In this document: positions 2,740 through 51,554 of the stretch, one piece after another
Layout of the letters: every line of letters begins with the position of its first letter
Numbering within the stretch: the stretch's first letter is position 1
DNA from: Octopus sinensis
Taxonomy: Eukaryota
Assembly (NCBI RefSeq): GCF_006345805.1
Contig: NW_021836306.1
Coordinates: forward strand, 3,243 to 67,242
Reading direction: 5' to 3'
DNA: 64,000 nt
Notes under the pieces: model-generated
Told to the model about the DNA's origin: nothing
Database searches by the model: none
Seen by the model: the letters and a program-made list of their open reading frames with translations, nothing else
Made by a program: the position numbers and the translations under genes

Positions 2740-3945
2740 TATATATATCAATCAGGTCATCCCATAAGTTCTGTCTGAAATTTGAATAAAGAAAACAAGT
2801 GATCAAACTGCATCTAACCAGACTCTCTCCCTAATTAGTTGGGCTATGACCCTCTCCGTGACCATCACCTGATCCAACACTTTGATACCCCTGTAGTTAT
2901 TTCTATCTAAAGCATCACCTTTACCCTTGTAGCAGTTGACTAAGGGGCTGCTATGCCAGTCATTGGGTATGACTCCATCATGAACTACCTGGTTTACAAA
3001 ACAGGTGACTTGGCCATAGCTCAGACCACCAGATATTTTAAGCATCTCAGCAATGATTCCTGATGGACCGGGGGCTTTTTCTGGCTTCATACTCTTAATT
3101 GCTTTATCTACCAGGGTGCAATCTATTCGGGTAGCTGGTCCTTTTACTGGGTCAACATTTGGCAGGCTTTCCTCCTCCCATTCATTCTCCATGTTCAGCA
3201 GTCTTTCATAATGGCTTCTCCAAGCCTCTTTCTTTTCAGAATCATTAAAAGCAAGGGCACCATCATCCATGCAGACACATTTCTCTCCTGTAACATCACA
3301 ATTTTCTCCCACACACTGTCTTGCAATCTGAAATACTTCAGTTCTTTGGTCCCCACGTCACAGGACATTGGCAACTTCCTTCTTTTCTACTTCACCCTTG
3401 GCTATGTATACAGGTCGCCCAGCCCCTCTTCTGGCTATCTGGTACACTCCCCCCCTACCCTCACCCTTCCAGGTTTGTTTCTTTGCTTTGATGGCTTTGC
3501 CTATCATATTATTCCACCCCCACATTACTCTAGGTCTGGAAGGGACTTTGCACAGACTTGCTCTGTGGCACTCAGTAAACTTGCTCCATAAGGATATCCA
3601 GCAGCCTTCTATTTCTTGATGAGGAGGTCCCTAAATCTCTGACCATGTGAAGGGTTCATTAGCTTCCAAATCCTTCTTTTCTGGATTGGTCTGCTTCTGG
3701 ACATCCTTCTGGCCTCAAGTCTAAAGTCACCAATGATAATGATTAGTCTATGCTGGGGGTTATATTCTTCACTCGGGAGGGTCTTTGTATTTAAGAGCAA
3801 CCCTGCATCCTGCTGTCTGTTGAGGATGAAATCAATCTGGCTAGCAGAGTCCCCTGATTGGTAGGTTATAAGGTAGCTGTCTGCTTTCCTGAAGTTAGTG
3901 TTGCAGATTAAAAGGTTGCATGCATCACAGAACTCCAGAAGCCCG
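2740..3945 (-). mobile_element. RTE-clade LINE fragment (endonuclease end to RT start), decayed
   Basis: LLEFCDACNLLICNTNFRK...QIDFIL...QHRL, then EKKEAWRSHYERLLN...KAPGPSGI...YKGKGDALDRNNYRGIK. Confidence 0.9.
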
Positions 3946-15080: not shown

Positions 15081-15349
15081 ATATTATATATATATATATG
15101 TGTATGTATATATATACCACTGATAGTGTTTAGAAGACCTTGTATCTTCTGTGATGGTGTTAATACATGGGACCAATGCCAAGACAGACATTCATCTCAG
15201 TGGAATCTCCTCCTTTCCCCTGGACTGTCCCTTATTAGGGTGTGTACTATGTCTTCTCCCCCCACCCCCACTACACCTCATCATCCACTACAATCCCTAC
15301 AAGTCCATGTTTGGCGGACAGTTTAACATTTATTTTTCTCTCTGTCTGC

Positions 15350-18300
15350 CGAGGATGGGTGGTAGTGGCACCGCGGTACTTTTTCACAAGAGCCTGGATC
15401 TCGAAGTCAAGACAATATTCGTAGACCCGGAGGGCAGACTGGTCGTTCTGGATGTTGACGGCAGCAATGGGTGCGCTTTTCGACTCGTATCAGACTACGC
15501 ACCGCCTTTAACAGGTTGGCTGGATTTCTTTCGACGCTTAGAAGTATTCCTGGGAACGTCTCGTCCTTTACTTTTAGGGGGGGATTGGAATGCTACCTTA
15601 GACATGCATCTAGACTATGTGGGGAGAGACAAAAACAGAAGGGGATGCAAATGCCTCAGAGACCTGCTCAGACGATTCCAACTGTCTGACAGGTACCGAC
15701 TCGACCACCCAAATGCACCAACGTGGACATGGAGCAACCGCAGTGGGTCGTCGAGATCGTATCTAGATAGGATACTGTGTAGGACAGTAGACAGGGATAG
15801 CTTAGGATGTCCACAATTCCACACAGTCAGCTACACGGATCACAAATTCATGACGTGTACGCTAGACTTAGATAAGGCACATAGACAAGGCCCTGGTTAC
15901 TGGAAACTGAACGCATCATTCCCGTCCGGACAAGTTTACAGAGACAGAATCAACACGTTAGTAAAAAGGGCTTTAACGGGAGCCATTGTCAACAACAAAT
16001 GGTGGTTCGCCCTCAAGAGATCAGTAAAAGTGGAAGCAATTAGATATAGCAAGGCACTAGCCGTAGATAGGAATGGAGTAGAGGGTGAGTTAGTTAAGAA
16101 GTTAGAAGAGGCAATAAGAAGCGGCATCGCATCCAACGTTTTTGCGGCAAGGTTGGCCCTTGACCAACACTTCAACGCCAAACACGAAGGGTGTGCTGTC
16201 AGGGCTAGGATGCGTGCTCTAAGGATGGAAGGTGTTGGAGCTGCGAGGGAGGCCCGGGTGGTGGAGGCGCTGCAGGGCAACAAACCCACCATTCGGTCTC
16301 TGGTAGATGAACAAGGGTGCGAATTGCTCGAGCCCAGCAATATGTGCGAGACATTTCAGCGGCACTTTGCTCGACTGTACGGGACGAGTGGTGAGCGTGA
16401 ATGCAGGGTGGACTTCAGTGCCTACCTGCACAGTCTACCACGACTCTCGGCAACAGAGGCAGAGTGCTGCGAAGGTGCCATCACGGCGGCGGAAGTGCGG
16501 GACGCAATAGCAGAATGCTCGAGGGACAAATCGCCGGGTTTTGATGGTCTGCCCTACGAGTTTTACAATTGAATGCCAGACTTGTTTGGAGACGTCTTGG
16601 CAGCGGTATACTGCAACTGGCAGCAAAACGGGAGCATACCCGGTTTTGTGAGTCGAGAGCCGTAACGCTGCTGAAGAAAGATCCAAACAAGGGGAACATT
16701 ATAGATAACTTTAGACCAATCACTCTGCTCAATGCAGACCTGAAAATTTTGACAAAGATGTTAGCCAAGAGGTTGGCGCTTGTCATCGAGAAACTGGTCG
16801 ACAACGCACAAACGTGCGCCATGCCGGGCCGGAGCATCCATGACAACCTCCATCTGATGCGCTACATCATAGACAGGGTAGTTAACGAACCTGGCATGGG
16901 TGGGGCCCTGATCAACTTGGAAGCCTTCGATAGGGTAGACCATCGATACTTGGAGGCAGTCCTGAGAGCAGCTGGTTTCGGTCCCATCTACCGCGGCTGG
17001 ATAGCTGCCTTGTACAGAGGCATCCGTTCGGTAATTCGCGTAAATGGACATCTATCGAGACCTTTCGACATTGCACGTTCGGTCCGTCAGGGATGCCCCC
17101 TCTCGGCGCTTCTATACGTATTGACTCTTGAGCCACTACTGCAGAAGCTGGCGACTCTGAGGGGCATCCCGCGAGAATTGGGATGCGGGACTAGCGTGTC
17201 TGCATACGCGGACGACGTCACCGTCATAGTGTCAAGACACGAACACTGGTCGGCGAAACACTAAAAGACTACGAAGCGGTGACAGGAGCAAAAATCAACC
17301 GGGAAAAGTCAGTGGGCTTGCGGCTCGGCACCTGGAGAAGCAAGCCCATGCCATCCACCAGTACCTCCGTCGTGGGATGCTGGACAGACGGCCTGGTTGA
17401 GTTGCTCGGGGTCTGGTTCGGTCCGGACCTCCAAATGGAGAAAAACTGGAACGAGATAACGAGTAGGGTGGTCACTCTCGCCCAGCAATGGGCCGAGAGG
17501 AAACTGTCCCTAAAAGGTCGGGCGGAGGTGGCGAACACGTACATCGCGTCCGTAATCTACTACCGCCTGACCGTCGTACCTTGTCCCGACCCTACCATCA
17601 CCAAACTAGAACGCATTCTCTTCCGCTTCTTGTGGAAAGGATGCATCTCGATGGTCAGGCAATCCATTTTCTGTCAACACCCGTTAAAAGGAGGGCTGGG
17701 TATGCCATGGTTGATGATGCGCAGACACGCGCTGAGACTGCGACATCTCCGGCTCTATGTAGACGACGGTGAACAGGTGTGGTCGCGTTTTGTGAGGCAC
17801 GCGTTCCCGTAGCTCGTCTCCATGACCGAACTGCAGTCGTGGATCAAAAAGAGGCCGAGGAAGGGCGTATGGCACCGCGGGTCGACCTTGAGTGACTTCA
17901 ACACGACCAAAGCATTCTATAGGGGATTCGTGGAGGGGAGGTACGACGACGATCTTGGGGCAAACCTGGGCGTCGACGAGGAATACCTGACCCACCTGTT
18001 TGAAAAAACTTTCGGGCCAGGACCTATGGACAACTTCCAGAGATCCCTAGCCTGGCGGTGCTACCGTTCGGGATAAACTCTATAGGCATGGCTTGAGAAA
18101 CACGGGGCCGACCTGCCCGAGATGCGGGCAGAGCGACGAAACCGCTCTGCACACAATCGTGCAGTGTCCAACAATCTCCGACCTGTGGGCTTATGTCGAA
18201 CGACTGCTGTCACGTGTGGGACGTGTCGGTTTATCAGCCGAGTCTATCGTTAATATCGTCACGCCTCCTTCCTTCAAACGGGAAGGAAGAGCTATTTTTA

Positions 18301-18898
18301 TCATACTTGTGGCTATGGCGAAAGAATGTATCTGGTGGACGCCTCTGAAAGGATTAGAGACAAACACTTTCCTCTCTGGTCAATCTCTCATCAACTTCTT
18401 CAAGTATAACTTGAAGAGGAAAGTGAGAGTAGAGAGGCAAATTTTGTCTAGTGAATGTTTTAAAAAAAGATGGGTGAATGTAGCAAGGATGGCACGTATG
18501 AATGACGAAGCCACCTTGACTATGATTCTATGAACCGTAAAAATTAATACAGAGAGTTGCTTATTTGCAAAAAAAAAAAAGAAATATAACATGTGACTTC
18601 ATTGACCGAGGTTACCGTGGTCTTTTCCGTAGGCTTTTCTTTCCACAGGTAAACCTCACCTTTCCTCCCCTTTACACTTCATATTGACATTTCTGTGATA
18701 ATGATCCCTATTGATCAAATTTTTTTTCCTTCCCCCCACATTTTTTTTTATTTTATCCCCCCCTTTTTTGTCCTCTTTCTTTCCATTTACGATCCCTTTT
18801 GATCGAAAACCAAACCCCCTTCTTTTACCCTCAAAAGAAAAGCTCTACCTTGTAATATTGTCCTGTCTGTGTGCAGCCCTGTGTGGCTAATAAAGAAA
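15350..18898 (+). mobile_element. Tx1/L1-clade LINE, 5'-truncated ORF2 (APE endonuclease, RT, C-terminal Cys domain) plus 3' UTR
   Basis: GGDWN, SYLDRI, TDHK, GYWKLN, KSPGFDGLP, QGCPLS, YADD, TCPRC motifs across ORFs 15151-18533 with stops and frameshifts; ends at AATAAAGAAAC. Confidence 0.93.
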
Positions 18899-20914: not shown

Positions 20915-22545
20915 ATCATCATCATCATCATCATTGTTTAGCGTCTGCTTTCCATGCTAGCATGGGTTGGACGGGTCAACTGGGGTCTGTGAAGCTGGAA
21001 GGCTTCGTCAGGCCCAGTCAGATCTGGCAGTGTTTCTATGGCTGGATGCCCTTCCTAACGCCAACCACTCCGCGAGTGTAGTGGGTGTTTTTTACGTGCC
21101 ACTTGCACAGGTGCCAGACAGAGCTGGCGAACGGCCACGAACGGACGGTGATTTTATGTGTCACCGGCACGGGGGCCAGCCGAGGCTGGAAACGGACGCG
21201 AACGGATGGTGCTTTTACGTGCCACCGACACGGTTGCCAGACAGAGCTGGCAAACGGCCACGAGCGGACGGTGCTTTTACGTGTCACCGGCACGGGGGCC
21301 AGCCGAGGCTGGCAACGGACACGGACGCATGGTGCTTTTACGTGCCACCGACACGGGGCCAGACAGAGCTGGCAAACGGCCACGAACGGATGGTGCTTTT
21401 ACGTGTCACCGGCACGGGGGCCAGCCGAGGCTGGCAACGGACGCGAACGGATGGTGCTTTTACGTGCCACCAACACGGTTGCCAGACAGAGCTGGCAAAC
21501 GGCCACGAGCGGATGGTGCTTTTACGTGTCACCGGCACGGGGGCCAGCCGAGGCTGGCAACGGACACGGACGCATGGTGCTTTTACGTGCCACCGACACG
21601 GGGCCAGACAGAGCTGGCAAACGGCCACGAACGGATGGTGCTTTTACATGCCACCGACACGGGGCCAGACAGAGCTGGCAAACGGCCACGAACGGACGGT
21701 GCTTTTACGTGTCACCGGCACGGGGCCAGGCGAGGCTTGCAACGAACACGAACAGATGGTGCTTTTACGTGCCACCGACACGGGGCCAGGCAGAGCTGGC
21801 AAACGGCCATGAGCGAATGGTGCTTTTACGTATCACTGGCACGGGTGCCAGACGAGGCTGACAGCGGACACGAACGGATGGGTCACTTAACCCCTGCTTT
21901 CTGATATATGATTTGATTTTGATTGTTCTCACTAGTCTTGCCGGGTCTTCTCACGCACAGCATACTTCCATAGGTCTCGGTCTCTGGTCATTTCCTTGGT
22001 GAGACCTAGAGTTCGAAGGTCGTGCTTCACCACCTCGACCCAGGTTTTCCTGGGTCTACCTCTTCCACAGGTCCCCTCAACTGCCAGGGTGTGGCACTTT
22101 TTCACACACCTATCTTCATCCATTCTCACCACATGACCATACCAACGCAATTGTCTCTCTTGCACACAACATCTGATTCCTCTTAGGTCCAACTTTTCTC
22201 TCAAGGTACTTACACTCTGTCGACTATGAACACTGACATTACACATCCAACGGAGCATACTAGCTTCATTTCTCGCAAGCTTACGCATGTCCTCAGCAGT
22301 CACGGCCCATGTTTCACTGCCATGTAGCATGGCTGTTCATACACATGCATCATACAGTCTGCCTTTTACTCTGAGCGAGAGGCCTTTAGTCACCAACAGA
22401 GGTAAGAGCTCCCTAAACTTTGCCCAGGCTATTCTTAAGCCGTTACACTTTCAGCACACCCACCCCCACTACTGACTTGGTCACCAAGATAACGGAAGCT
22501 ATCAACTACTTCTAGTTTTTCCCCCTGGAAAGTGACGGAATACAG
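20915..22545 (-). mobile_element. RTE LINE 3' fragment (end of ORF2, expanded 3' UTR, (GAT)n tail)
   Basis: LHGSETWAV...RLRWYGHV...GRGRPRKTW, stop at 21932; tail at about 20915-20935. Confidence 0.88.
21085..21880. repeat. GC-rich minisatellite, about 61-bp unit x13, alternating A/B variants
   Basis: GGTGCTTTTACGTG recurs about every 61 nt; GCCACCGACAC and GTCACCGGCAC variants alternate in the first two-thirds. Confidence 0.93.
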
Positions 22546-25325: not shown

Positions 25326-26279
25326 GCAGTGGCAGTGGTCGTCTGCTGCTGTTGTTGTTGTTGGTCGATTTAATGGAGAATCAATGATTTTGAAACTCTC
25401 TGGTTTCGGACCAGACATTCCTATACATACATGCTTGCATATATATATATATATATATATATTCAGCCACTTGTCTTCCTCTATCTCTCTCTCTCTCACT
25501 CCTCCTCATCTTTGTCACTGCTAGCCTAAACTACTTCCTTTTACACGCAGCCTTCAAACTGTAAAGACACATTTGTGTTCCCATGCGCTGCCAGAATCTC
25601 CTTCGTCTCAGCCAGAAAAGGCCTTTTCGTTTGTTTCTCTTGTTTGTTTTCTTCTTTATTTCATTTCTCGTATTGTATTTTCTTGTACATGTATTTTTAT
25701 CTTTTATTTTTTTTTAAAGTTTTATTCGTATCGTTTTTACATCCTGTTTGTGTTACATTTTTTTGTTTGTTTTTACCCCTCTGTGAGGTAATTTTATTTT
25801 AATTCTCTCGCAGGAAGGACTAGTTTGGCGAGTCGTGTTCTGTCATGCCTTCGAAACATGCTAGAGTCTAACTAGTGACAACTGATGATAAGGGATTTTT
25901 CCTTGTGTAGTATGTCCTGTACTCTGTTTTTCTGTTGTAAAAAAATGATTTTTCCAGTTTCGTTTCTCGTTGAGTTCTACGTCTAGTTGTGGTGTCCTGT
26001 ACTCACGTATATATATTTATATATGCATAAACATACATACTTATAGCCTTATTTCTATACATACATTCCTAAATATGTGTGTATATATATAAACACATGT
26101 ATATATACTGTATATAAATATACACACACACACAAAGAGAGAGTGGTGAGGAATGTTACAACGATAAGTGTTAGTGTGTAGAATGCAATGTATGCGATGC
26201 AGGTTCGATTCCCAGCGAAGCCATTTACAACAACAACAACAACAAGAAGAAAATTGAAGTTTAATATTTCTGGAAATAT

Positions 26280-29200
26280 TTATTTGTCAAAATAAAAGAA
26301 AGCAAAAGATTGACGTCCAGGAATAATTCCAAAAACCATCAAAGAATTGTCTGAAACATCCAAACCAAGAACTTCATAGACTTCATTATCATCCTCTCTG
26401 AGGAGTAAATATTTTGGATTATCTTTTAATCCCAGGATTTCATCATCCTCAGATGTTTCCTCTTCAATATGTTGAGGTATTTCGTACATATTGCTTCTTA
26501 TATCTGTTATATAAACACATTCACCAATTATGGTTAGAAGAGGTCTTGGAATATAATATCCCGGATCAAAAAATATTCCTTCTTCTATTCTTATCCTCCT
26601 CACCAAAGACTTTTCCCTGAACCATTCCACAAAACAATAAACTTCCCAAATTCCAGACTCCTTCATCTCCCTCCTCAAAACAAGAACATCACCAAAAGAT
26701 GTGACTCCCACACCATCCACCCCTTCATCTCCCTCCAACCTTCCCCGTCTCCACATATTCCCACGACACACTTCATCTTTAAATTTCCCATCTTTGATAT
26801 CAACCACATCCACATAATAAGGGTCAAAGATGTCAAGGTCCATGCAATAATAGTAATACTTGTTGTTTCTCCATATTCTTTCGTATTTCTTTTGTCTCTC
26901 TTCTTGAGTTATGTCTCTAATATAATGACCACCGCACACGAGTTGATTGTCATTGTATTTATAAATCCTGCTGTAGTATTTCTCAGTTCTGATGGTTTTT
27001 AAACGACGGAGATCCCTGTTGAAGACCCTCATTTCTCTCCCAAAGGTGACAACAAAACATTCCTCTGTCCACCGACATATGTCCAGTGCTGGTCGTTGTT
27101 GTTGTTCATGTTGAAGTATGTCCACTGTTGTTGTTGTTGTTCTGATTAATGTGACACTTTCTCGAAATATCAACACACTCACATTCTCATCTAACTTAAT
27201 TAGTTTACTGTTCTGGTCCCTAATGTCCCTATAATCATAATTAACAGGTTCCTCAAATGCAGGAATGGAAAAAGGGACCATTGCTGTCCTATATGGAAGT
27301 CTCCTCACTGATATTTCATCAATTCCTGAATTATTAATCTCCGCTATGTAATTACCACATCTCACCTTTAATCTACCTTTACCAATTATTTCACCTGATT
27401 TACCTCTTCTTCTTCCTCCTCCATCTCCTCCTCTGTATTCCAATTTGTTAATTAATTCATTACTGAATATTTCCTTGTTCGTTTCAGATGTAATGGAAGG
27501 GAAACGAAGACCAGAATCAAGATTTAATAACGACACAGATTCCAGAATGTTCACTTGGTTCCCATCAAACTTTATGCAATGACATTCAATCAATTCATTA
27601 TGTACACACCAGTAAATACACGCCACTTTTCTCCATATTACACCATAAGGGATGAGACTCGACCAAACTTGATATGTCTGCAAATCTTCTCCATTCAGTT
27701 GTAATATTTCTTTCCTTTTAGGAACCGTGGCCATTATGTGTGATTCTTGTGCAAAACACACACCACCAACTAAACTTGCAACATTTCTGTGACATAGCAA
27801 CTGGCCGTCTTCATCGAATATTTTAACATTTCCATTATTGACTTTTTCACACACAACTGTCTTTCCTTCCTCAGAGACATCAAAATCTTTTACTTGAACA
27901 GGACATTCGTCTGTTTGTAAACGAGCAACCGGGAAGCTGTCTCGATTCACCATAAACAACCCTTCAACATACATTTCATTCTCTCTTCTCAATTTGGGGC
28001 TTCCAACAAACCTTGGCCCTTTACAGTCTATACTGGAGAAATCTACTTCATCTTTATAAATTCTTTTATTTAAAAATATTCTCTTGTATTCCCCATTCTG
28101 GGTCAAACACAAAATGTTTCGATATTCAGATAAACCAAAACATTTCTCCCACTCACCATAAATGTACAAAAAACTGTCATCAATTGTCATCCTGTCATCA
28201 CCAAAATAATCCTCCATGTAGTGTCTGACTGAATGTAAATATTGACCACCACTGTTGAAGAAGATGATGAATCTTTCGTTGAAGACAATGATGACATCTT
28301 CATCAGTAACTTTAATATCATGGATTCTATCAGAATAATCTCCATCTTCGTTTCTCCATATTAATGGTTCAGGTATGTCTATTTTATTTATTTCCTTCAC
28401 ACTCGAATGTATTTCATCAATATCAACAAAATGCAAATGTCTTCTATCTCCCGATTCACTCAAAACCAGTTGATTATTTGATAAAGAACCCACACATTTA
28501 TAATTATTTCTCGTTTGGTAAATTACCAACGACAATGGAAATTCCCCTTTTAATGTCAACAGTTGGTATTTATTATGATAACGATCCCAATTCGTAATGA
28601 CCAGTGTGTTTGACTGCCATCGACACATTTTAATATAATAATAAACATTCACTTTGATTGAATCCATAAGGTGACCATCCAATGTGAATATCTTAATGTT
28701 TCCATTCTCCCCGTCCCATCCTGCAATCAGATTATTTTCAGTAAGAACCAAAGAATCAATCCTCGCTGGTCCTTTGTCTCCCAAATGTTCAGGGAGAGGA
28801 ATATGTCTGGCTTTATCAGAAACTGTGAGGTCCTGTAGATATAAAGTGGAAGACAACATTTCACTGAGAGAAATGTGTCTGGAAAATACATCCACCAGGT
28901 CGATATAATAATTAAGTTGATTATTAGTAACGAGATCATTAACCAACAAATTCTGATCGTTTATGGCAAACATACGGCTTCTGTCTATCAGATAAACAGA
29001 TGTTTGGTCAATAGATCCACCTTGGAGACTGAGGGGACGTTTCACTTGGGACATTAAAACACTGGGGACCATCTGACGACCTCCATGACCACCACCACCT
29101 ATTCTAGTGTTGTACTGAAAAGCTTTTTCCTTAGTAACAAGTAATAGCTTTTCTGTTTTCTTGTCTATTGATAAGGATTTCACAAACACAGGGATATTAA

Positions 29201-31323
29201 TTGTCTTAATTACTTCGACTTGATTATAATAATTGATGGCTAAAATGTCAAAATGTGATGGTTTATCACAATAACAAACAATTTCACATTCACCCATCTT
29301 ACACACCCGTACATAAGGCTGCCTTAATGATACACTTCTCACTGTCTTTGATAGGTTTCCGATGACCCTTAATTGTTTCTGTAGGGGTAATGTGACCCCT
29401 ATATGATTAGAATCCCATCGACATATATCTGTGGCTGTAGACGGCAGAGATAATCTGGACACAATGTCTCCTTCCTCAGAAACGTACAACAAGCAATCAT
29501 GCTTGATGTCGGACACCACCAACTGTCCATTGGACAGATTACATATTTCGCCAATGACAAGTTTTTGGTCATTCTCCTTTTCTTTGAGTCGTAGATTTAG
29601 ATTTCTGATATAAGGATTTTTAATGGGTAAAAGACAGCCAGATGACCGGTCTTGATACTTGTAAAGAAGAACCCTGTTGAGTTGAGTGTCCGGGACATAA
29701 AGAGTTCCTTGGAAAACAGCAATGTGAGGGTGAACAGGGAAAGGCAGTTCCCACTGCCTTCATTTGTCCATATAGATCGTAACATCTGAGAATAGAGTGT
29801 CTCCTGAAGAGGACATAGAAATAAACATTATCAGAGTAGATGTGATGAGGGTGGCCATAGAATGGAAGGTATTTTTGAAAAAGTTCTTCACCACATGTGG
29901 AATAAAATACCATTTTATTTTCGTTTCCATCTACGACTACAAAATTAATTGGAGTTGCAGCAATGCTGACATTATGATGTCCCAGAGAAATTCTTTCTGC
30001 AATGTCAACTTTATCTTCGTTGATCAAGAAGATATGGACCTCGCTTTTGTTTCCACTTGTGGTTAGAGCTAAACACTTATTTGATACAACATGACATAGT
30101 TCAATGTAATCAGTATGGACTTTCATTAAAGGGCCTTTCATTAGCCCAGGGCATGTGATACACTGAAATTCTTTGTTTTCACGGTAAAACACCAGAAATC
30201 CTTTAGAATTCATTCTACAAAAGCAAGAAGGAATCTCAGGGAAAGTTGAATTATTTTGGTTAATTATTTCTCCAGTCTCAGTGATTAATATAGCTTTATT
30301 ATTCCTGTAGAATATTAATATAGAAGATGTAGACATAGGTAGAATATTAGTAACGTTGTAGCAATCCTCAATATAAATATAGCTGTTCAATGTTGGGGTC
30401 CATAGCTGGAGGTTATATGACTGCCTGAGCCAAAAGTCTTCATTTGTTCCAATGATATGAAGGACATCAAAATAATCGGTTACAAAAATGTTTTCTTTGC
30501 CAACAGAAATATGGCGGCATTTCATGCCAATTTCTCTTGTTGTCACAGCACCTGTACCTGATATCCGATAAATAATATGTCCCTGAAGGACATAAAAATG
30601 GTTTTGGTACACAGAGATGTGGCTTGGAATGTCCAGGGAATTGGTATCCACCTCAAATAACTGCTGGCCATCCACATTGTAACAGGTAACCCTGTTAATA
30701 TTGGAAAAGGATACTAAGAGTTTATTTTGTGCTCCTACAGCAATATCTGAAGGTGTTTCTTTCGTTATGAATTCGTATTTTATTCTATTCTCTTCCCAGT
30801 CAATGACGTATATGGTCTGACCAAACATTTCTACACCTATAAGCATAGAATGTTCCAAATAAGAAACCAAGATTAATCCTAGCTGAATTCTTTTGATTTC
30901 AAAACTTAAAGGGTTGATAATAAGAATCATCTTTCGAAAGGGGAGGGTGGCCAGGACTGTGTCTTGACTGATTCTTGTAAAATCAGTGACAGAAGATGAG
31001 CAATGAACTTCATTTCTGTTGCCGTCTCTTGTTATACAACATATTGTCATACAGTGGTGGGAATATGTTACAATACCCCCTTGTATGACAACAATATTGG
31101 ATATTGGGTTGCTTAAGTCTTCACCAGATTCTTCAATCACTACTTCTCTGGTCACAACTGGCCGAAGAGGCCGAAATTTTGTGGTTACTTTTGGTGGTTC
31201 AATGGTCTTGTGGTTGTATGGGTTACAGGTGACATAAATGTCAAAGAGTCTTTGTTGAAACCAATCAAGATTTTGGTGAACAAAATCATTATTTTGTTCT
31301 GCAAATTCCAGAAATCTTGGCAT
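26280..31323 (-). CDS. Large intronless tandem beta-propeller (NHL/YWTD-like) protein, about 1,680 aa when the 567-aa and 1080-aa ORFs are joined at a 1-nt frameshift near 29757
   Basis: The frame of the 1080-aa ORF stays open up to 29759 and reads QWELPFPVHPHIAVFQGTLYVPDTQLNRVLLYKY; recurring blade motifs DFTRISQDTVLATLP, DICRWDSNHIGVTLP, DICRWTEECFVVTFG, PSDIAVG, PSHISVY; fold assignment is by pattern only. Confidence 0.75.
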
Positions 31324-31347
31324 TTTACATTTGATATTACGTAAAAT

Positions 31348-31662
31348 TCAAGATCCATTTAAACCCAGAGAGTCCATGTGATTGCATTTATCCTTTACAT
31401 AATCTATAAACGTATTGATGTGGTCTGTTTTGATTAGTGTTTGGTAACATGTCACAATATGAAGGAAACTTGGTAACATGGACTTTTCCTGTTCTTTAGA
31501 TTTCTTTGTGTCTTTTCTTTCCTGTTCTTCTGTTTTCTTTGTGTTTTGTGTATGTAATATTTGGGTAAGAATTGGTGTAGTTTCCTTATAAATTGCTGTT
31601 GTATCACAGACTGTGGCAGGAATGAGAGCCAACATTTTGTTTCCTTCATTAATCTTCTCCAT
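31348..31662 (-). CDS. 104-aa ORF in frame with the propeller ORF (N-terminal extension broken by one TGA, or an in-frame uORF)
   Basis: Same frame; only TGA plus 8 sense codons separate it from ATG 31323; candidate acceptor TTCATTTTATTTCAG ends at 31780. Confidence 0.45.
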   Translation of the reverse strand: MEKINEGNKMLALIPATVCDTTAIYKETTPILTQILHTQNTKKTEEQERKDTKKSKEQEKSMLPSFLHIVTCYQTLIKTDHINTFIDYVKDKCNHMDSLGLNGS

Positions 31663-34206
31663 TTTATGAATATAGAATTATTATCTTTTTCTGTTAAATA
31701 TATTCTTTTCTGTGGATTTTGTTTTCTTCCTTTGGAATACAATTTATCTCTTCAAAATTCACTAATTTTTACATGAAAGCTGAAATAAAATGAAAACTTT
31801 ATTAGTTTTGTGAAAAGCTTTTGGTAAAATAATATTTACTTGATTCATTCAAAGAATTTCAAGGAAAACACACATTTCATTAAATATATTAAACAAATTG
31901 TTTATTTGACAGTGAAGTTAAACATTTAAACTGTTTACAATGGAATAATCATTAGAAATAAAACTTGAAGATATAAATACACCATTATCTTTATTGACTG
32001 AATATAAGTGATGGTGAAAAGTTTTGTAGTAAGAAGGAATATAAATATTTTGTTGAGGTTATTTTTACAGATATTATCGGTTGAAATTATAGCCAGGACT
32101 GATTTCCTGCTACAACATTTCATATCGAAATGTCAGACGGAAACAAACAATGAGATCAAAGAGAAAAACATCTGTTGTTTGTTCTCATTGTTTATCTCAT
32201 TGTTTGTTTACATCTGACATCTCGATAGGAAAGGTTTTAGCAAAAAATCAGAGCCAACTATAATTTCTATGGAATATCAATAGAATAATGTGAAAAACAC
32301 TGCTAACAAAGTAGAATGTGGTGTTGACTTCTAAAACGATTTAATATATTTTACAGGAATTTATGGTTGCATAATGAAATACCACGTCCCTACAAATCAG
32401 GAATATAAGTATTATTAATAATTATATGCACTGGAAATGATGGACAGTCATGGTTGGCTTGGTTTCCATCATATTTACCTGGATTCACAGATACCAATAA
32501 AGCTGGAGATGAAACTGTTCTTAACCTGACAAATGCTGTAAATCTCTCGACATTTCAATATAATCCACACAATTATCATACACAACATTGATTAACTCGG
32601 AAAGCTTATCCAAAGATGGGCTTTCATATAATCACACTGATAGACAGCATGTTGAGAGGATCGTTATTATTTGTTGCTGATTGAGATCATAAAGATTGGT
32701 TAATGAATTAGCCCAATTAATGAAAGGTAGGTTCATCTTAATTATCTTTAATATAAGGGACAATGTTTGGGTAGCAATGAGAAAGGTGTGTTTGTATGAA
32801 AAAGGGGTTTGGCAGGTGAAGTGTGTTTTGTTTTGTGTTAGGTGAGGAGTTATAACTTGGTGTAGTTTATTATGAAGTATTGGGGGTTTAATGAGGTGGA
32901 TTAGGAAATATTGGTGGGGTGTTTAATGACATTGTGGTTACCCATCATCATCAGAATGATCCTCCACCGCCTCCTTGACCCCAGGAGGAATGAAAAGTAA
33001 AAGAGACCTTCTTCAGGATGTCAGCTCTTTGAATATACATGGACTAAACAACAACATATTTTTTGGGAAAAGCTGGATAAGGCTATGTTGTTGTTATTGC
33101 TGTTGTTGTTGACAACAAAGTTTATACAGAGAAAAGCAGATAATTGCAAATATTTCTATTGTAAAATTAAATTGGAATGAATGTTTATGTTTCACTTGGT
33201 TTATTTTGGGGAAGAAAAACCTACAAAACCCCTCATAATAATTAGTCTTTAATCTAATTGTAGATGTATGTATATACACATGCATACATATATATGAATG
33301 AATGTGTATAATATATACACAAGGATGCACATTTGTATATTTATACATCCATACGTCTGTATGTATGTATGATCATCATTTTACCCCCACTCTTCATGCT
33401 GGAATGGGTTGGATGGTTCAAAGAATATCTTGCCTGAAGTTACATTTTCTGGTTTTCTTTCTGCAGCTGGATGCTCTTCCTGACACCAACCACTGCACAA
33501 TGTGCACTGGGTGCATCTTATGGCACCATCGCTAGAGACAATCGCCATGACCTTGACAAAACTAAAGGTTCCCCTCAATCTCTGGGTGTGACATATACCT
33601 TGGGATGGGTGAGAGATCTAGGGTAATAAATATATGAAAAGGAGTGGTTTGGGTTTTAGGGAGAGACCCAGGTAGGTCCAGTAACATCCCTAGTTTCATT
33701 GGAAGAATGGTGAAGAGAAGAGATTTACTGCCAATCTTTGTCACAGCAATAAGATAGAGTAAAAAGAAGAAGAGAGAGTGATTGAGAGATGAAAGATAGA
33801 AAGATACTTCTGCTAATTATTAATAAGTATATGTATATATACACACACATACATACATACACATATATAGACAGACACATTTTGAATGACTTCTGACTCC
33901 ATCAAAAGAGGATAGGTCTCTTTATTTTTCACATTTAATCACAGATATCTTTATTCTGATGTATAATTTTATATTTTATATTTGACATTCTATACTTGAC
34001 TTTCTAAGTTTGATAAATGTATGCTAATTTATACTTATAATTTATAATCTATCATTTTTAATTCTTAATTTTGTAAAGTTTAATTTTTTAATTTTATATT
34101 TTTAATGTTTAATTTAATGCTTAGTTTTAAGGTGATGTAAAATTAGGTTAACAATATTTTGAAAAAGAACCTGAAGATGGTAGAATTGTAAATCTTATGA
34201 TTACAC

Positions 34207-42203: not shown

Positions 42204-43225
42204 GAGGGGCGTTCAATAAGTAATGCCCCTGATCCACTTCCCATAGCAGTAGAGCAACGAAACTTGGAACAGTTATTAGTCTTTTTCTACATAGGAACAA
42301 CCCAGAGTTACGCATTTCTCCCATCGTTTGATGCAGCTCTGAAGACCGTTTTTGTAGAAGACACTAGCTTGGTCCTCCAACCACGACGTGACTTCAGAAA
42401 TCAAGGCTGCATCATCTGGGAAACGCTTTCCTTTCAAAAACAACTTCATGGCTGGGAAGAGGTGAAAATCAGAGGGTGCAAGGTCTGGAGGGTAGGGGGA
42501 TGGGGGAAGAGTTCATAGCCGCACGCCTGTGCTTCTGATCTGGCGACACGCGAGTTGTGGACCGGAGCGTTGTCCTGCAAGAGGAGGATGCCTTTGCTGA
42601 TCTTGCCCCGCCTTTTGGTTTTGATAGCTTCTCTTAATTTCCTCAAAAGTGAAGCATGATAGGCTCCTGTAATTGTGGTACCCTTTGCCAGGAAATCGGT
42701 CATCACTACTCCGTCCTGGTCCCAGAAGACTGTGAGCATGACCTTGCTAGCGGAGGGCTGCACCCTTGCCTTCTTTGGAGGAGGTGAGTCATGGTGCTTC
42801 CACTGCATTGACTGGGCTTTGGTCTCTGGATCATAGTGATGGACCCAGGTCTCATCCTGTGTAATCAGTCTTTTGAAAAATTTTGACTCATCTTCTTGGC
42901 ACATCCCTAAATTCATCCTCGAGCACTCGACGCGTTCTTGCTTCTGGAAAAGTGTGAGCAACCTGGGAATCCATCTGGCAGACACCTTTTGCGTATGCAA
43001 ATGGTCATGAATGATAGTTTCCACAGACCCGGTACTAATCTTGACCTCATGGGCTATTTGGCGAATAGTTATGCGTCGATCTTTCAAAATGGCAGCCTCA
43101 ACTTGACAGACAGATGCCTCATCAATGGCAGAAAGGGTGCGACCAGATCTGGGAGCTGTTTCCACAGAGTTCCGACCATGTTTGAATTCACGATGCCAGC
43201 ATTTTACAAGGTCATATGATGCTCT
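42203..43225 (-). mobile_element. Mariner (DD34D) transposon remnant, one TIR retained, transposase N-terminus missing
   Basis: TA|CGAGGGGCGTTCAATAAG TIR; ITQDETWVH, LLQDNAPVH and frameshifted [11 protein letters not shown]; stop at 42276-42278. Confidence 0.93.
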
Positions 43226-43289
43226 GGTTGTGGTTGATTTTGTTGTTGCTGCTGTTGCTGTTCCGCCTCCTCCACGGGAGTGGCATGGG

Positions 43290-43595
43290 GGAGACACAAT
43301 CGTCGGTTGTGGAGGCATGCAGGCCTGACACTGAAAAGTCCAAGATTTAAGCTGGACCATCTTCCAGAGTCCATCCATCATAGCATTATGATGGCTCTTT
43401 TTTTTGGCCTGGGATCTTCTGAAAGTCCGTGGCACATTGGAGTCAGACAGAGACGAGACATGTCCCACATTCGACCCAGCGATTACGGAACGTATTTTCG
43501 GGTTCCGTACAGATGTGGCAGGTGTGATTTTCTGGGCAGTGTTCTATTTTGGAGCAGCGACCAGTCTTATCGCACGCCGCTATGGATTCCACCAT
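43290..43595 (-). pseudogene. Decayed PHD-finger-like coding segment abutting the mariner
   Basis: GCC ATG G at 43595: ...TCHICTEPENTFRNRWVECGTCLVSV*LQCA..., then WTFQCQAC after a 1-nt shift in an A8 run. Confidence 0.4.
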
Positions 43596-49699: not shown

Positions 49700-50600
49700 A
49701 ATACAGTTGTACTTCCTAAGTGAATAGCTAAATGGGGAGATAATTCCATTTTGTCAGGGAATGATTTCTCAGAGACATCACAATGCTGTGACTTTCCTCC
49801 TGTCTGAACACATTTGTGAGAATGTAAAACGTTTGCTTGAGAAAAGGATACAGCACAGATGTCACAGTGATATGGTTTATCTCCCATATGAATGCATATA
49901 TGAGTAGTTAAATGAAACCTTCACGTGAATGATTTACCACGGATATCACAGCTATATTGATTTCTTGTATGAATATGTTTGTAACTAAGGTATTTAAATT
50001 ACAGAATGATATACCACAGATATCACAATGGTATGGCCTCCTTTGTGTATGAATATGTTTGTGTCTATTCAAAGCACCAGTTATATAGAATGATTTACTA
50101 CCGATATCACAATGGTATGGCCTCCTTTGTGTATGAATATGTTTGTGTCTATTCAAGGCACCAGTTATATAGAATGATTTACTACCGATATCACAATGGT
50201 ATGGCCTCCTTTGTGTATGAATATGTTTGTGTCTATTCAAGGCACCAGTTATATAGAATGATTTACTACCGATATCACAATGGTATGGCCTCCTTTGTGT
50301 ATGAATATGTTTGTGTCTATTCAAAGCACCAGTTATATAGAATGATTTACTACCGATATCACAATGGTATGGCCTCCTTTGTGTATGAATATGTTTGTGT
50401 CTATTCAAAGCACCAGTTATATAGAATGATTTACAATGGATATCACAGTGATATGACTTTCTCATGTATGAACACATTTGTGTTTAGTAAAGTCAGTTGA
50501 GAGAAGGATTCACTACAGATATCAGTCATAAAAGCTTCTCTGTATGAATGTGCTTAGATTTAGTTAAATGAGTATTTTCAGAAAAATATCCAACACACTG
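49700..50600 (-). pseudogene. Degenerate zinc-finger tail downstream of the ZNF-D stop, including an 84-bp x5 array
   Basis: HCDIGSKSFYITGALNRHKHIHTQRRPY repeats lack the second Cys; frameshifts and stops on both sides. Confidence 0.85.
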
Positions 50601-50606
50601 ATATAG

Positions 50607-51554
50607 TTAATCCCCTGTATGGGTCCGTTTGTGTTTAGTTAAGTTACCAGACTGTGAGAATGATTTACCACAGACATCACAGTGATATGGCTTCAGACCC
50701 ATATGAATACGTTTATGATTAGTGAGACCATCATTCCTAGAGAATGATTTACTGCAGATGTCACAGTGATATGGTTTCTCTCCTGTATGAGTACGTTTAT
50801 GTTTAGTCAAGTGACCAGATTCAGAAAAATATTTACCACAGATATCACAGTGATATGGTCTTTCTCCTGTATGAGTACGTTTGTGGTAAGTCAAGTGAAC
50901 AGATTCAGAGAATGATTTACCACAGATATCACAATGATGTGGTTTCTCTCCTGTGTGAACACGTTTCTGACTAGTGACACCATCATTCCTAGAGAATGAT
51001 TCACCACAGATGTCACACTGATATGGTTTCTCACCTGTATGAATACAGATGTGCCTGGTTAAGTTGTGAGTATCAGTGAATGATTTACCACAGATATCAC
51101 AGTGATAAGGATTCTCACGTGCATGAATACATTTATGCGTAGTCAAGAGACTACTTCTAGAGAATGATTTACCACAAATATCACAGTGATATGGTTTCTC
51201 TCCTGTATGAGTACGTTTATGGTTACTTAAGTGACCAAATTCTGAGAATGATTTACCACAGATATCACAATGATATGGCTTCTCTCCTGTATGAGTACGT
51301 TTATGTCTAGTGAGACCATCATTTTTAGAGAATGATTTACCACAGATGTCACACTGATATGCTTTTTCTCCTGTGTGAATACGTATGTGGACAGTTAAAC
51401 TAAACCTTTTAGAGAATGATTCCCCACAAATATCACAGGGATATGGTTTCTCACCTCTATTAATACATTTGTGTTTAATAAGGTTACTTTCCAGAGAAAA
51501 TGGTTTCTTACACACACCACAATGGTATGACGATTTTTCAGTCACTTTCTGCAT
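50607..51554 (-). CDS. C2H2 zinc-finger protein ZNF-D, 315 aa, 11 fingers (two degenerate)
   Basis: Intact ORF from ATG 51554; acceptor TCTCTCTTATTTCAG near 51935. Confidence 0.92.

What the first reader, a model, noticed from the sequence alone, without database searches (positions are those of the whole stretch)
26280..31780. Giant single-exon tandem beta-propeller gene (about 1,680-1,790 aa) embedded in a zinc-finger cluster
Seen: 5.0-5.4 kb of nearly continuous coding sequence with no intron, SINE or microsatellite, in DNA otherwise saturated with them. The ORF track splits it, but the 80 codons between the 567-aa and 1080-aa ORFs are open and read as a further blade (HPHIAVFQGTLYVPDTQLNRVLLY). 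Blade-like motifs recur roughly every 250-300 aa (DFTRISQDTVLATLP, DICRWDSNHIGVTLP, KMCRWQSNTLVIT, GGVCFAQESHIMATVP, DICRWTEECFVVTF). Known: molluscs have expanded B-box/TRIM proteins that usually carry one C-terminal NHL-like propeller. Inference: this protein concatenates about 5-6 highly diverged propellers with no RING or B-box visible, an architecture I do not recognise. It could be a multivalent RNA-binding or immune-recognition protein.
Basis: partly seen in the sequence, partly recalled or inferred. Interest (0 to 1): 0.82.

Follow-up and report, generated by a model that had tools for sequence, protein, structure and literature searches.

The report
Broken copy of hypervariable six-propeller octopus gene
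This is a recently disabled copy of an undescribed, octopus-only gene family whose giant proteins string together six beta-propeller domains; two of these carry a fast-changing surface of the kind seen in immune or other recognition receptors.

Summary
On the minus strand, 31662..26283 is one 1,792-codon reading frame with no repeat inside, flanked by C2H2 zinc-finger genes. In this window it is broken twice: an in-frame TGA (31348-31350) and a 2-bp deletion (about 29758/29759).

It belongs to a family found only in octopods (Octopus vulgaris, O. sinensis, O. bimaculoides, Argonauta hians). The family has at least 42 clusters at 90% identity, all unnamed and without any Pfam domain. Intact paralogs are encoded by one coding exon.

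Profile comparison shows six homologous modules of about 240-310 aa after a basic, helical N-terminus. AlphaFold models the best ones as six-bladed propellers. Foldseek returns only multi-propeller proteins. The weak sequence links are to NHL and WD40 blades. There is no RING, B-box or NACHT.

New result: among close paralogs, propellers 1-3 show purifying selection (dN/dS 0.2-0.6; propeller 5 is low but less clear). Propellers 4 and 6 have dN/dS above 1. In propeller 4 all 44 hypervariable sites lie in alternate loops (P = 2e-10), inferred to be the B-C and D-A loops of the top face.

Best reading: an intracellular, birth-and-death family of variable-surface recognition proteins. The ligand and the output are unknown.

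The parts
26283..31662 (-). Whole reading frame of the six-propeller gene copy (1,792 codons; two lesions)
   Evidence: ORFs and frames. It aligns end to end with intact paralogs of 1,798-1,870 aa at 84-90% identity. DNA is 94.7% identical to the P0002 locus over 7,568 bp.
26280..26282 (-). Stop codon, shared with the paralogs (...FFYFDK*)
31348..31350 (-). Lesion 1: in-frame TGA where paralogs have CAA (Gln; P0002 DNA) or Arg
   Evidence: DNA alignment with L001. Paralog N-termini read GLNGSQ/R-ILRN.
29757..29760 (-). Lesion 2: 2-bp deletion (frameshift) inside propeller 2; not in a homopolymer run
   Evidence: Window GAA--GGCAG versus L001 GAAATGGCAG. The frame change is seen.
31132..31662 (-). 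N-terminal region (about aa 1-177): Lys/Arg-rich start, predicted helices, conserved GLD...FL...WF..LFDIY..NPY.HK.I..PK...KFRPL motif; no match to any known domain
   Evidence: Helices 53-146 at low confidence. Family alignment. No PDB sequence match. No signal peptide or transmembrane segment.
30373..31131 (-). Propeller 1 (about aa 178-430), conserved
   Evidence: The AF2 model of paralog P0035 has 23 strands over residues 189-405 (about six blades) at pLDDT 77-88. hhalign of module 1 against module 2 gives 93% probability. dN/dS is 0.3.
29574..30372 (-). Propeller 2 (about aa 431-695), conserved; holds the frameshift
   Evidence: AF2 strands 437-639, pLDDT 55-79. hhalign against modules 3 and 4 gives 89-90%. 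dN/dS is 0.3-0.5.
28794..29573 (-). Propeller 3 (about aa 696-955), highly conserved among close paralogs; poorly modelled; contains a Gly-rich insert
   Evidence: hhalign against modules 4 and 6 gives 92-94%. Column entropy is about 0.1-0.25. The ratio is 0.44, with P for a ratio below 1 of 3e-6. AF2 pLDDT is below 50 for much of it.
27924..28793 (-). Propeller 4 (about aa 956-1245): hypervariable on one face
   Evidence: 24 strands make six blades, pLDDT about 70-89. dN/dS is 1.5-2.4 pairwise and 1.48 with eight sequences, P = 0.007. All 44 hypervariable columns lie in the 12 odd-numbered loops and none in the 11 even ones, P = 2e-10.
27204..27923 (-). Propeller 5 (about aa 1246-1485), nearly invariant among close paralogs; contains an RGG/Gly-Arg-rich insert
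   Evidence: Entropy is about 0.1. dN/dS is 0.2-0.4 among intact paralogs and 0.76, not significantly below 1, with eight sequences. hhalign against module 4 gives 94%. AF2 confidence is low.
26283..27203 (-). Propeller 6 (about aa 1486-1792): hypervariable on one face, with variable-length loops
   Evidence: pLDDT about 70-92. dN/dS is 2.4-4.0 among intact paralogs, P = 0.004-0.02. 26 of 28 hypervariable loop positions lie in alternate loops, P = 1e-4. The alignment of 15 paralogs shows discrete multi-allelic positions in an invariant framework.
31663..33474 (-). Upstream flank duplicated together with the gene (putative promoter/5' UTR); possible 3' splice acceptor ttttatttcag at 31780-31782
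   Evidence: The same 94.7% identity block with L001 runs to 33474. The flank shared with other paralogs is 0.66-2.1 kb. Sequence. Paralog P0005 has a small 5' exon spliced just upstream of its start codon.
26026..26279 (-). Downstream flank within the same duplicated block
   Evidence: Patchy homology continues to about 20340.

Best explanation
The locus is a recently inactivated member of an octopod-restricted, birth-and-death multigene family. The proteins are about 1,700-1,900 aa, lack a signal peptide or membrane segment, and so are presumably intracellular. Each has a short basic/helical N-terminal region followed by six tandem, homologous, six-bladed beta-propellers of the NHL/WD40 blade type.

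Shown: the six-module architecture; the propeller fold of the well-modelled modules; the restriction to octopods; spread by segmental duplication in zinc-finger-rich parts of one small chromosome; purifying selection on propellers 1-3 (propeller 5 is nearly invariant among close paralogs, but its ratio is not significantly below 1 in the eight-copy count); an excess of amino-acid-changing substitutions in propellers 4 and 6, concentrated in every second loop; and mosaic divergence that points to exchange between paralogs.

Inferred: the alternate loops are the B-C and D-A loops, that is, the canonical ligand-binding top face. Propellers 4 and 6 would then be variable recognition surfaces that paralogs diversify against fast-changing ligands, such as pathogen, virus or mobile-element products, or other rapidly evolving partners. 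The conserved propellers and the N-terminus would form the constant scaffold or output part. In logic this resembles the variable WD40 propeller of fungal HET-E/HET-D receptors or the variable loops of TRIM5alpha.

The window copy itself most likely makes no full-length protein.
For: Family and distribution: 42 clusters, all from Octopus, at 48-90% identity, all 'uncharacterized'. An exhaustive phmmer over 1.84 billion representatives found only 28 clusters; the five looked up, including the most distant, are all Octopus or Argonauta hians. Two profile searches reached nothing outside Octopus.

Gene structure: five paralog models are single exons of exactly 3 x (aa + 1) nt.

Architecture: module-to-module hhalign gives 88-95% probability over 193-246 columns, linking all six, and the motif aligns in register.

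Fold: AF2 gives 24-strand and 23-strand modules at pLDDT 70-90. The top 50 Foldseek PDB hits are all multi-propeller proteins, at E 1e-12 to 1e-18. A single-domain hit to an NHL-repeat protein has TM 0.69. The module profile reaches the TRIM3, TRIM2 and Brat NHL domains at 1e-7 to 1e-5 and WD40 designs at 1e-9.

Constraint: the O. bimaculoides / O. sinensis ortholog pair has dN/dS 0.40. Six of the seven indels against P0002 are in frame. All 8 loci are open over about 1,150 codons.

Diversification: per-module dN/dS; hypervariable columns confined to propellers 4 and 6; the odd/even loop asymmetry of 44:0 and 26:2. With eight sequences, Nd:Sd is 360:45 in these loops against 137:74 in the conserved modules, Fisher P = 4e-12. 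Hypervariable sites are enriched in Trp, Arg, Pro, Gly, Glu and Tyr and depleted in Ile, Val, Leu and Cys.

Exchange between paralogs: dS is 0.72 in propeller 1 of P0004 against about 0.05 in the rest of the gene.

Pseudogene status of this copy: TGA plus a 2-bp deletion. Copy P0017 is split in a similar way.
Against: No expression, binding or phenotype data exist, and no paper mentions these genes.

No recognisable effector or signalling domain was found, so the output half of the model is conjecture.

AF2 confidence is low for propellers 3 and 5 and for the N-terminus (mean pLDDT 53-58), and the alignments behind the models are shallow and come from a single genus.

The face assignment rests on a predicted strand order and on alignment to WD40/NHL blades, not on coordinates or a solved structure.

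Region-wide dN/dS is only 1.5-1.9 with eight sequences. It was computed with counting methods on paralogs that exchange sequence; no likelihood site model was run.

The two lesions could in principle be assembly errors or a polymorphism. Private substitutions in this copy (15) are no higher than in other paralogs (5-28).
Confidence: 0.55

Rival explanations
1. Multivalent RNA-binding regulators in the manner of the TRIM-NHL proteins (Brat, LIN-41/TRIM71, Mei-P26). The propeller top faces would bind RNA motifs, and the variable propellers would retune RNA specificity, for example towards viral or transposon RNAs.
For: The weak profile matches include TRIM2, TRIM3, Brat, Thin, Mei-P26 and TRIM71 NHL domains. 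From established knowledge of Brat and LIN-41, the NHL top face is the RNA-binding face, which is the face inferred here to be variable. Arg is enriched twofold at hypervariable sites. Gly/Arg-rich (RGG-like) inserts sit in propellers 3 and 5.
Against: The Pfam NHL model is not matched. Propellers 4 and 6 carry net negative charge (-11 and -12). Glu is enriched at the variable sites as well as Arg. Known TRIM-NHL RNA binders are conserved single-copy genes, not diversifying families. No RING, B-box or coiled coil is present.
Confidence: 0.15
2. Scaffold or substrate-adaptor proteins of a multi-subunit complex, comparable to DDB1 or to WD40/Kelch substrate receptors of ubiquitin ligases. The variable propellers would track fast-evolving endogenous partners, possibly the co-clustered, rapidly expanding C2H2 zinc-finger proteins.
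For: The best Foldseek hits are DDB1, Trm734, IFT-A and Utp21 tandem-propeller scaffolds. The genes sit among C2H2 zinc-finger genes in the window and in paralog loci. One annotated model (P0007) fuses zinc fingers to the propeller protein.
Against: The Foldseek matches are generic (8-12% identity, TM below 0.25) and reflect only 'several propellers in a row'. The fusion model may be an annotation artefact. Co-location may merely reflect a duplication-prone region. No ligase-docking motif was identified.
Confidence: 0.15
3. The family is functionless or decaying, and the elevated dN/dS in propellers 4 and 6 is relaxed constraint plus alignment noise rather than adaptive diversification.
For: About two thirds of the O. 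vulgaris models are truncated or split. The window copy and P0017 are broken. Whole-gene dN/dS between close paralogs is 0.6-0.9. Loop regions contain indels.
Against: Neutral decay would not hold propellers 1-3 at 0.2-0.5, nor keep 8 of 8 copies open over about 1,150 codons, nor make nearly all indels in frame. It would not push the ratio significantly above 1, nor confine variability to alternate loops at 44:0. Family members are present in Argonauta and have close counterparts in three Octopus species.
Confidence: 0.07
4. The ORF belongs to a transposable element or an endogenous virus, which would explain its copy number and its lack of introns.
For: It is multi-copy and has a single coding exon. 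One paralog model (P0014) is fused to a DUF4371 domain, which from my own knowledge is hAT-transposase-related. Transposons lie nearby in the window.
Against: No transposase, reverse transcriptase, integrase or capsid domain is found in any member. Viral fold hits are only generic propellers. The homology shared with different paralogs ends at different places (0.66-2.1 kb upstream, 2-11 kb downstream), so there are no common termini. The copies looked up lie at about 9.6-10.4 and 22.2-22.8 Mb of one chromosome. Divergent family members (P0052, P0044) have close counterparts in three species on large chromosomes.
Confidence: 0.03

Closest known systems
TRIM-NHL proteins (Brat, TRIM71/LIN-41, TRIM2/3, Mei-P26, Thin): NHL six-bladed propeller
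   Same: The module size (about 250-300 aa) and the six four-stranded blades are the same. The blade motif is also similar: a hydrophobic strand, then an x-D/N-x-N-x-(I/L)-K-(I/V)-F strand, then D-G-x-L. The family profile reaches their solved NHL domains at E 1e-7 to 3e-2. A single-domain structural match to an NHL-repeat protein has TM 0.69.
   Different: There is no RING, B-box or coiled coil. There are six propellers instead of one. The Pfam NHL model is not matched. The octopus proteins form a lineage-specific, diversifying multigene family rather than conserved regulators.
Fungal HNWD/NWD NOD-like receptors (Podospora HET-E, HET-D, HET-R)
   Same: In both, a propeller domain has a few positions per blade on the interaction face under positive diversifying selection. 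Both show exchange of sequence between paralogs and have pseudogenised members (PMC1805685 abstract; compare).
   Different: The octopus proteins have no NACHT NTPase and no HET or other death-effector domain. Their blades are highly diverged from each other rather than near-identical repeats under concerted evolution. They are animal proteins and carry six propellers.
Tandem-propeller scaffolds (DDB1, Trm734, IFT-A subunits, Utp21, LRP4/LRP2 YWTD arrays)
   Same: Several propellers follow each other in one chain, and these are the best Foldseek matches.
   Different: Identity is only 8-12% and global TM is low. Those proteins are conserved and mostly single-copy, and have 7-bladed WD40 or YWTD-EGF units. 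None shows one-sided hypervariability.
TRIM5alpha/TRIM22 PRY-SPRY variable loops (functional analogy only; from my own knowledge)
   Same: These are intracellular proteins whose recognition domain carries patches of positively selected surface loops on a conserved beta scaffold, in duplicated gene clusters.
   Different: The fold is unrelated (SPRY, not a propeller), they have a RING/B-box effector, and they occur in vertebrates.

Membership tests
NHL-repeat propeller (Pfam PF01436; NHL domain of TRIM-NHL proteins) | Six-bladed propeller, each blade a four-stranded antiparallel sheet of about 40-45 residues | tested here: met
   Propeller 4 has 24 strands at pLDDT about 70-89. Propeller 1 of P0035 has 23 strands at pLDDT 77-88. 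TM is 0.69 to a 262-aa NHL-repeat protein. Propellers 3 and 5 are poorly modelled.
NHL-repeat propeller (Pfam PF01436; NHL domain of TRIM-NHL proteins) | Sequence match to the curated NHL repeat model | tested here: not met
   PF01436 is not listed at E <= 1 for either window ORF or among the 25 families listed for the 30-member scan. Only sub-threshold DUF4934, DUF5711 and WDR90 propeller hits appear.
NHL-repeat propeller (Pfam PF01436; NHL domain of TRIM-NHL proteins) | Profile-level homology to solved NHL domains | tested here: inconclusive
   TRIM3 scores 1.5e-7, TRIM2 1.2e-6 and Brat 1e-5 for whole sequences, but with zero or one stretch significant on its own. Designed WD40 proteins score better, at 1e-9.
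TRIM (tripartite motif) proteins | N-terminal RING, B-box and coiled coil | tested here: not met
   No RING or B-box hit appears in the window ORFs or among the families listed for the 30-member scan. The N-terminal profile has no PDB match. The N-terminal region is helical at low confidence only.
WD40-repeat proteins | Match to the WD40 repeat model, with GH...WD signature; usually 7 blades | tested here: not met
   No PF00400 hit is listed; only sub-threshold ANAPC4_WD40, WDR90 and CFAP43 hits in one to six members. The modules have six blades. The blade register nevertheless aligns with WD40 designs.
NOD-like / STAND receptors with a propeller sensor (fungal HNWD type) | Central NACHT/NB-ARC NTPase domain | tested here: not met
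   No NTPase domain is listed by Pfam for the window ORFs or the 30-member scan. The only non-propeller part is about 177 aa long.
NOD-like / STAND receptors with a propeller sensor (fungal HNWD type) | Positions on the propeller interaction face under positive diversifying selection | tested here: met
   The ratio is above 1 in propellers 4 and 6, and hypervariable sites lie in alternate loops (44:0 and 26:2). The face assignment is inferred from the blade register.
Transposable-element or viral ORF | Transposase, reverse transcriptase, integrase or capsid domain, and common element termini in all copies | tested here: not met
   No such domain is present. Flank homology ends at different points for each paralog pair.
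Pseudogene (this window's copy only) | Disabling mutations relative to intact paralogs | tested here: met
   There is a TGA at 31348-31350 and a 2-bp deletion at about 29758/29759, while P0002, P0003 and P0004 are open throughout.
Pseudogene (this window's copy only) | Excess of private substitutions at otherwise invariant sites (long-standing relaxed constraint) | tested here: not met
   The window has 15 private changes against 5-28 in 14 paralogs. Inactivation is therefore recent, or the lesions are errors or polymorphisms.

The most novel reading that the evidence does not exclude
Octopods evolved their own class of intracellular variable receptors. These are giant six-propeller proteins in which two propellers present hypervariable top faces, diversified by duplication, exchange between paralogs and positive selection. 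They would serve innate immunity or genome defence, possibly in functional partnership with the co-clustered expanded C2H2 zinc-finger genes. That would be an animal counterpart of the fungal WD40-NLR repertoires, built without a NACHT or TRIM module.
Probability: 0.3. Interest if true: 0.85.

Novelty: new variant of a known kind. Interest (0 to 1): 0.66.

Why it matters
From general knowledge, cephalopods lack antibody-type adaptive immunity, and their innate recognition repertoire is poorly known. Their genomes are known for lineage-specific expansions such as protocadherins, C2H2 zinc fingers and GPCRs (titles and abstracts). This family adds an unannotated, domain-less, octopod-only expansion with the molecular signature of a recognition arms race: a conserved scaffold, one hypervariable face, birth and death of copies, and mosaic exchange. 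If it is functional, it provides defined candidate receptors and defined candidate binding surfaces to test for pathogen, virus or transposon recognition. It would also be a second, independent case of hypervariable propellers used as recognition modules. For annotation, it shows that many 'hypothetical proteins' on O. vulgaris chromosome OX597841.1 are one family, and it explains why their models are fragmented.

Tried and rejected
- Self-BLASTP of the protein found no internal repeats. Only profile-profile comparison revealed them.
- Pfam scans of the window ORFs and of 30 family members gave nothing above threshold.
- PDB sequence searches with the whole-family profile and with the N-terminal profile gave nothing significant.
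- Three searches beyond the first homolog search (family profile; single-module profile; exhaustive phmmer) reached no homolog outside Octopoda.
- Foldseek on whole multi-domain models returns only generic multi-propeller hits with low TM. It could not discriminate NHL, WD40 and YWTD types, because the tool cannot search single domains.
- An exact-sequence look-up of seven window ORFs, meant to identify the source assembly, found none. The species of the window is therefore inferred only as an Octopus close to O. vulgaris.
- Searches for LOC identifiers, the assembly accession and topic terms found no description of the family.
- The transposon or virus reading was rejected for lack of domains and of shared termini.
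- An old pseudogene was rejected by the private-substitution count.
- Assembly error is considered unlikely, because there are two independent lesions and neither is a homopolymer slip. It is not excluded.

Full report
**1. What is in the sequence**

On the minus strand there are three consecutive ORFs: 31662..31348 (104 aa), 31323..29620 (567 aa) and 29522..26280 (1080 aa). A three-frame translation shows that the frame of the last ORF is open from 29759 (1159 codons) and the frame of the middle one from 31347 to 29623. The two overlap in different frames.

The N-terminal 200 residues of the closest relatives align at 88-96% to 31662..31060 without a break. The gene therefore starts at the ATG at 31662 and runs 1,792 codons to 26283.

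A DNA alignment with the intact paralog P0002 shows exactly two disabling differences:
- a TGA at 31348-31350, where P0002 has CAA and other paralogs have Arg;
- a 2-bp deletion at about 29758/29759.

The six other indels within the ORF are 3 or 6 bp long. Tandem Repeats Finder reports no array between 25323 and 34000, and no second copy lies in the window. C2H2 zinc-finger ORFs, a non-LTR retrotransposon and a mariner-type transposase surround the gene.

It needs the addition that this copy is broken twice.

**2. What it belongs to**

The joined protein finds 42 protein clusters, all from Octopus vulgaris (27), O. sinensis (8) and O. bimaculoides (7). Identities are 48-90%, and all are called hypothetical or uncharacterized.

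An exhaustive phmmer search of 1.84 billion cluster representatives finds only 28 clusters. The five looked up, including the most distant, are Octopus paralogs on other, large chromosomes (P0052 at 34% identity and P0044 at 48%, each clustered at 90% identity with counterparts in three Octopus species) and two Argonauta hians proteins at 41%. Profile searches with the whole family and with a single-module profile reach nothing outside Octopus. No paper in the searchable library mentions the genes.

Five paralog gene models are single exons whose length is exactly 3 x (aa + 1). One paralog (P0005) has a 31-aa 5' exon spliced immediately upstream of the main exon. The window has a plausible acceptor at 31780.

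The seven O. vulgaris copies that were looked up lie at about 9.57-10.43 Mb and 22.17-22.83 Mb of the 29.2-Mb chromosome OX597841.1, next to zinc-finger genes.

The window shares 94.7% DNA identity with the P0002 locus over 7.6 kb, including 1.8 kb upstream, and patchy homology up to about 6 kb further downstream, to window 20340. The shared flank differs from one paralog pair to the next, and only the coding region aligns with distant paralogs. This is segmental duplication, not transposition.

About two thirds of the O. vulgaris models are truncated or split. P0017 is split into 465-aa and 1304-aa ORFs, much like the window copy. The window copy has 15 private substitutions at otherwise invariant sites, within the range of 5-28 seen in paralogs. 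Its inactivation is therefore recent, or the lesions are errors or polymorphisms.

**3. Architecture and fold**

Plain self-BLAST sees no repeats. Profile-profile self-comparison gives offsets of about 260-290 and about 517 aa. When the family alignment is cut into six modules, pairs 1-2, 2-3, 2-4, 3-4, 3-6, 4-5 and 4-6 align over 193-246 columns at 88-95% probability, which links all six. V-T-L-P) in register in every module.

AlphaFold2 with the family alignment gave only moderate global confidence (mean pLDDT 57.6 and 52.7). Several modules were modelled well:
- propeller 4, with 24 strands (six four-stranded blades) at pLDDT about 70-89;
- propeller 6, at about 70-92;
- propeller 1 of P0035, with 23 strands at 77-88;
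- propeller 2, at 55-79.

Propellers 3 and 5 and the helical N-terminus are poorly modelled.

The top 50 Foldseek hits in the PDB are all multi-propeller proteins (DDB1, Trm734, IFT-A, Utp21, LRP2/LRP4) at E 1e-12 to 1e-18. Identity is 8-12% and global TM is low. The viral library gives only generic propellers, plus one clean single-domain match to an NHL-repeat protein (TM 0.69, rmsd 4.9 Å).

Pfam gives nothing above threshold in the window ORFs or in 30 family members. There are only recurrent sub-threshold hits to propeller families of unknown function. A profile built from the six modules reaches designed WD40 proteins (1e-9) and the solved NHL domains of TRIM3, TRIM2, Brat, Thin, Mei-P26 and TRIM71 (1.5e-7 to 3e-2), through sums of weak blade matches.

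There is no RING, B-box or NACHT, and no signal peptide or hydrophobic segment. The N-termini are rich in Lys and Arg.

**4. Selection**

The O. bimaculoides / O. sinensis ortholog pair P0039/P0040 has dN/dS 0.40. All eight loci examined are open over the last about 1,150 codons. The family is therefore constrained coding sequence.

Among the intact O. vulgaris paralogs P0002, P0003 and P0004, the ratio differs sharply by module:
- N-terminus: 0.4-0.95;
- propellers 1, 2, 3 and 5: 0.2-0.5;
- propeller 4: 1.5-2.4;
- propeller 6: 2.4-4.0 (binomial P 0.004-0.02).

In an alignment of 15 close paralogs, columns with four or more different residues are essentially confined to aa 961-1230 and 1591-1770. 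By contrast, aa 511-960 and 1231-1590 are almost invariant.

When these columns are mapped on the predicted strand order, all 44 hypervariable positions of propeller 4 fall in the 12 odd-numbered loops and none in the 11 even-numbered loops (length-adjusted P = 2e-10). In propeller 6 the split is 26 to 2 (P = 1e-4). In an antiparallel meander, alternate loops lie on the same face.

The alignment to WD40 blades puts strand A at IDSLVL, B at LIAGWD, C at NIKIFT and D at LMDSIK. The variable loops are then B-C and D-A, which by convention form the top, ligand-binding face. This last step is inference.

With eight coding sequences, changes were counted against the column consensus. The ratios are:
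- propeller 2 (tail) plus 3: 0.44 (P for a ratio below 1 = 3e-6);
- propeller 5: 0.76, not significantly below 1 (P = 0.16);
- propeller 4: 1.48 (P = 0.007). Its variable loops give 1.79 (P = 0.0017) and the rest of the module 0.74;
- propeller 6: 1.49 (P = 0.013). Its variable loops give 1.85 (P = 0.006).

Non-synonymous to synonymous counts are 360:45 in the variable loops against 137:74 in the conserved modules (Fisher P = 4e-12).

Variable sites are enriched in Trp, Arg, Pro, Gly, Glu and Tyr and depleted in Ile, Val, Leu, Cys and Thr, as expected for exposed interface residues.

Synonymous divergence is mosaic: it is 0.72 in propeller 1 of P0004 against about 0.05 elsewhere, and it is raised in propeller 2 of the window copy. 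This points to exchange between paralogs.

**5. Interpretation**

The best-supported reading is a lineage-specific, birth-and-death family of intracellular proteins with a constant scaffold (N-terminus and propellers 1-3 and 5). It also has two variable recognition surfaces (the top faces of propellers 4 and 6), diversified between paralogs by positive selection and recombination. The pattern is that of genes engaged with fast-changing ligands.

The closest functional parallel is the WD40 propeller of the fungal HET-E/HET-D NOD-like receptors. There, four positions per repeat on the interaction surface are under positive diversifying selection and repeats are exchanged among paralogs (PMC1805685).

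The nature of the ligand (protein or RNA; pathogen, transposon or endogenous partner) and the signalling output are not known. RNA binding in the TRIM-NHL manner and an adaptor or scaffold role, perhaps linked to the neighbouring zinc-finger genes, remain open rivals. A transposon or viral origin and simple decay are poorly supported.

The copy in this window is most likely a young pseudogene.

**6. Novelty and score**

The fold and the evolutionary logic are both known. What appears undescribed is the combination: six tandem NHL/WD40-like propellers without any known effector domain, restriction to octopods, one coding exon, and two one-sidedly hypervariable propellers. I rate it a new variant of a known kind, with interest 0.66.

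The main weaknesses are the absence of expression or functional data, the moderate model confidence, and the use of counting rather than likelihood methods on recombining paralogs.

Noticed in passing
window 57451-59493 (-): A 680-aa C2H2 zinc-finger ORF contains a run of near-identical 28-aa finger units (…[17 protein letters not shown][ST][10 protein letters not shown]… repeated about 5 times). In these units the first zinc-binding Cys is replaced by Ser. This looks like a recent intragenic amplification of a finger that probably cannot bind zinc. The antisense 179-aa ORF is a by-product of the repeat.
   Followed up: partly
window 49908-50477 (-): A 189-aa ORF is made of five identical copies of a degenerate finger unit (RRPYHCDIGSKSFYITGALNRHKHIHTQ) in which the second Cys is lost. 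It lies directly downstream of an intact 315-aa zinc-finger ORF (50607-51554). It looks like a decayed, recently amplified tail of a zinc-finger gene.
   Followed up: partly
window 15151-18533 (+): A G+C-rich (0.54) non-LTR retrotransposon has an endonuclease (PF03372) and a reverse transcriptase (PF00078). It is split into at least four ORFs by frame changes. Further possible retrotransposon ORF fragments at 2803-3312 and 21932-22330 on the minus strand had no Pfam match.
   Followed up: partly
window 21090-21881: A G+C-rich tandem array with a 61/122/245-bp period (about 13 copies of 61 bp) is open in all three plus-strand frames. This produces three overlapping spurious ORFs of about 250-280 aa.
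   Followed up: partly
window 42446-43468 (-): A 340-aa ORF carries a mariner-type transposase DDE domain (PF01359, E 2e-24). It is probably a Tc1/mariner element copy.
   Followed up: partly
L004 20137-22950: About 4.5 kb downstream of the intact paralog P0003 lies a second, degenerate partial copy of the propeller gene (45-95% protein identity in pieces, in shifting frames). It overlaps an annotated 414-aa gene model that has zinc-finger Pfam hits. The model may be a chimera of a zinc-finger gene and a propeller-gene relic.
   Followed up: no
L007 1517-6915: Paralog P0017 is annotated as two adjacent ORFs (465 aa and 1304 aa) on the same strand. This is much the same way the window copy is split, and it suggests that many 'partial' family models are frameshifted copies.
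   Followed up: no
L005 (P0004) propeller 1; window propeller 2 (29574-30372): Synonymous divergence is strongly mosaic along the gene. It is 0.72 in propeller 1 of P0004 against about 0.05 elsewhere, and 0.14-0.17 in propeller 2 of the window copy against 0.02-0.06 elsewhere. This indicates recombination or gene conversion between diverged paralogs.
   Followed up: partly
proteins P0007 and P0014 (O. vulgaris): Two annotated models fuse the propeller protein to other domains: N-terminal C2H2 zinc fingers in P0007, and DUF4371 plus PF27073 in P0014 (DUF4371 is hAT-transposase-related to my knowledge; not checked here). These are probably read-through annotation artefacts, but real chimeras were not excluded.
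   Followed up: no
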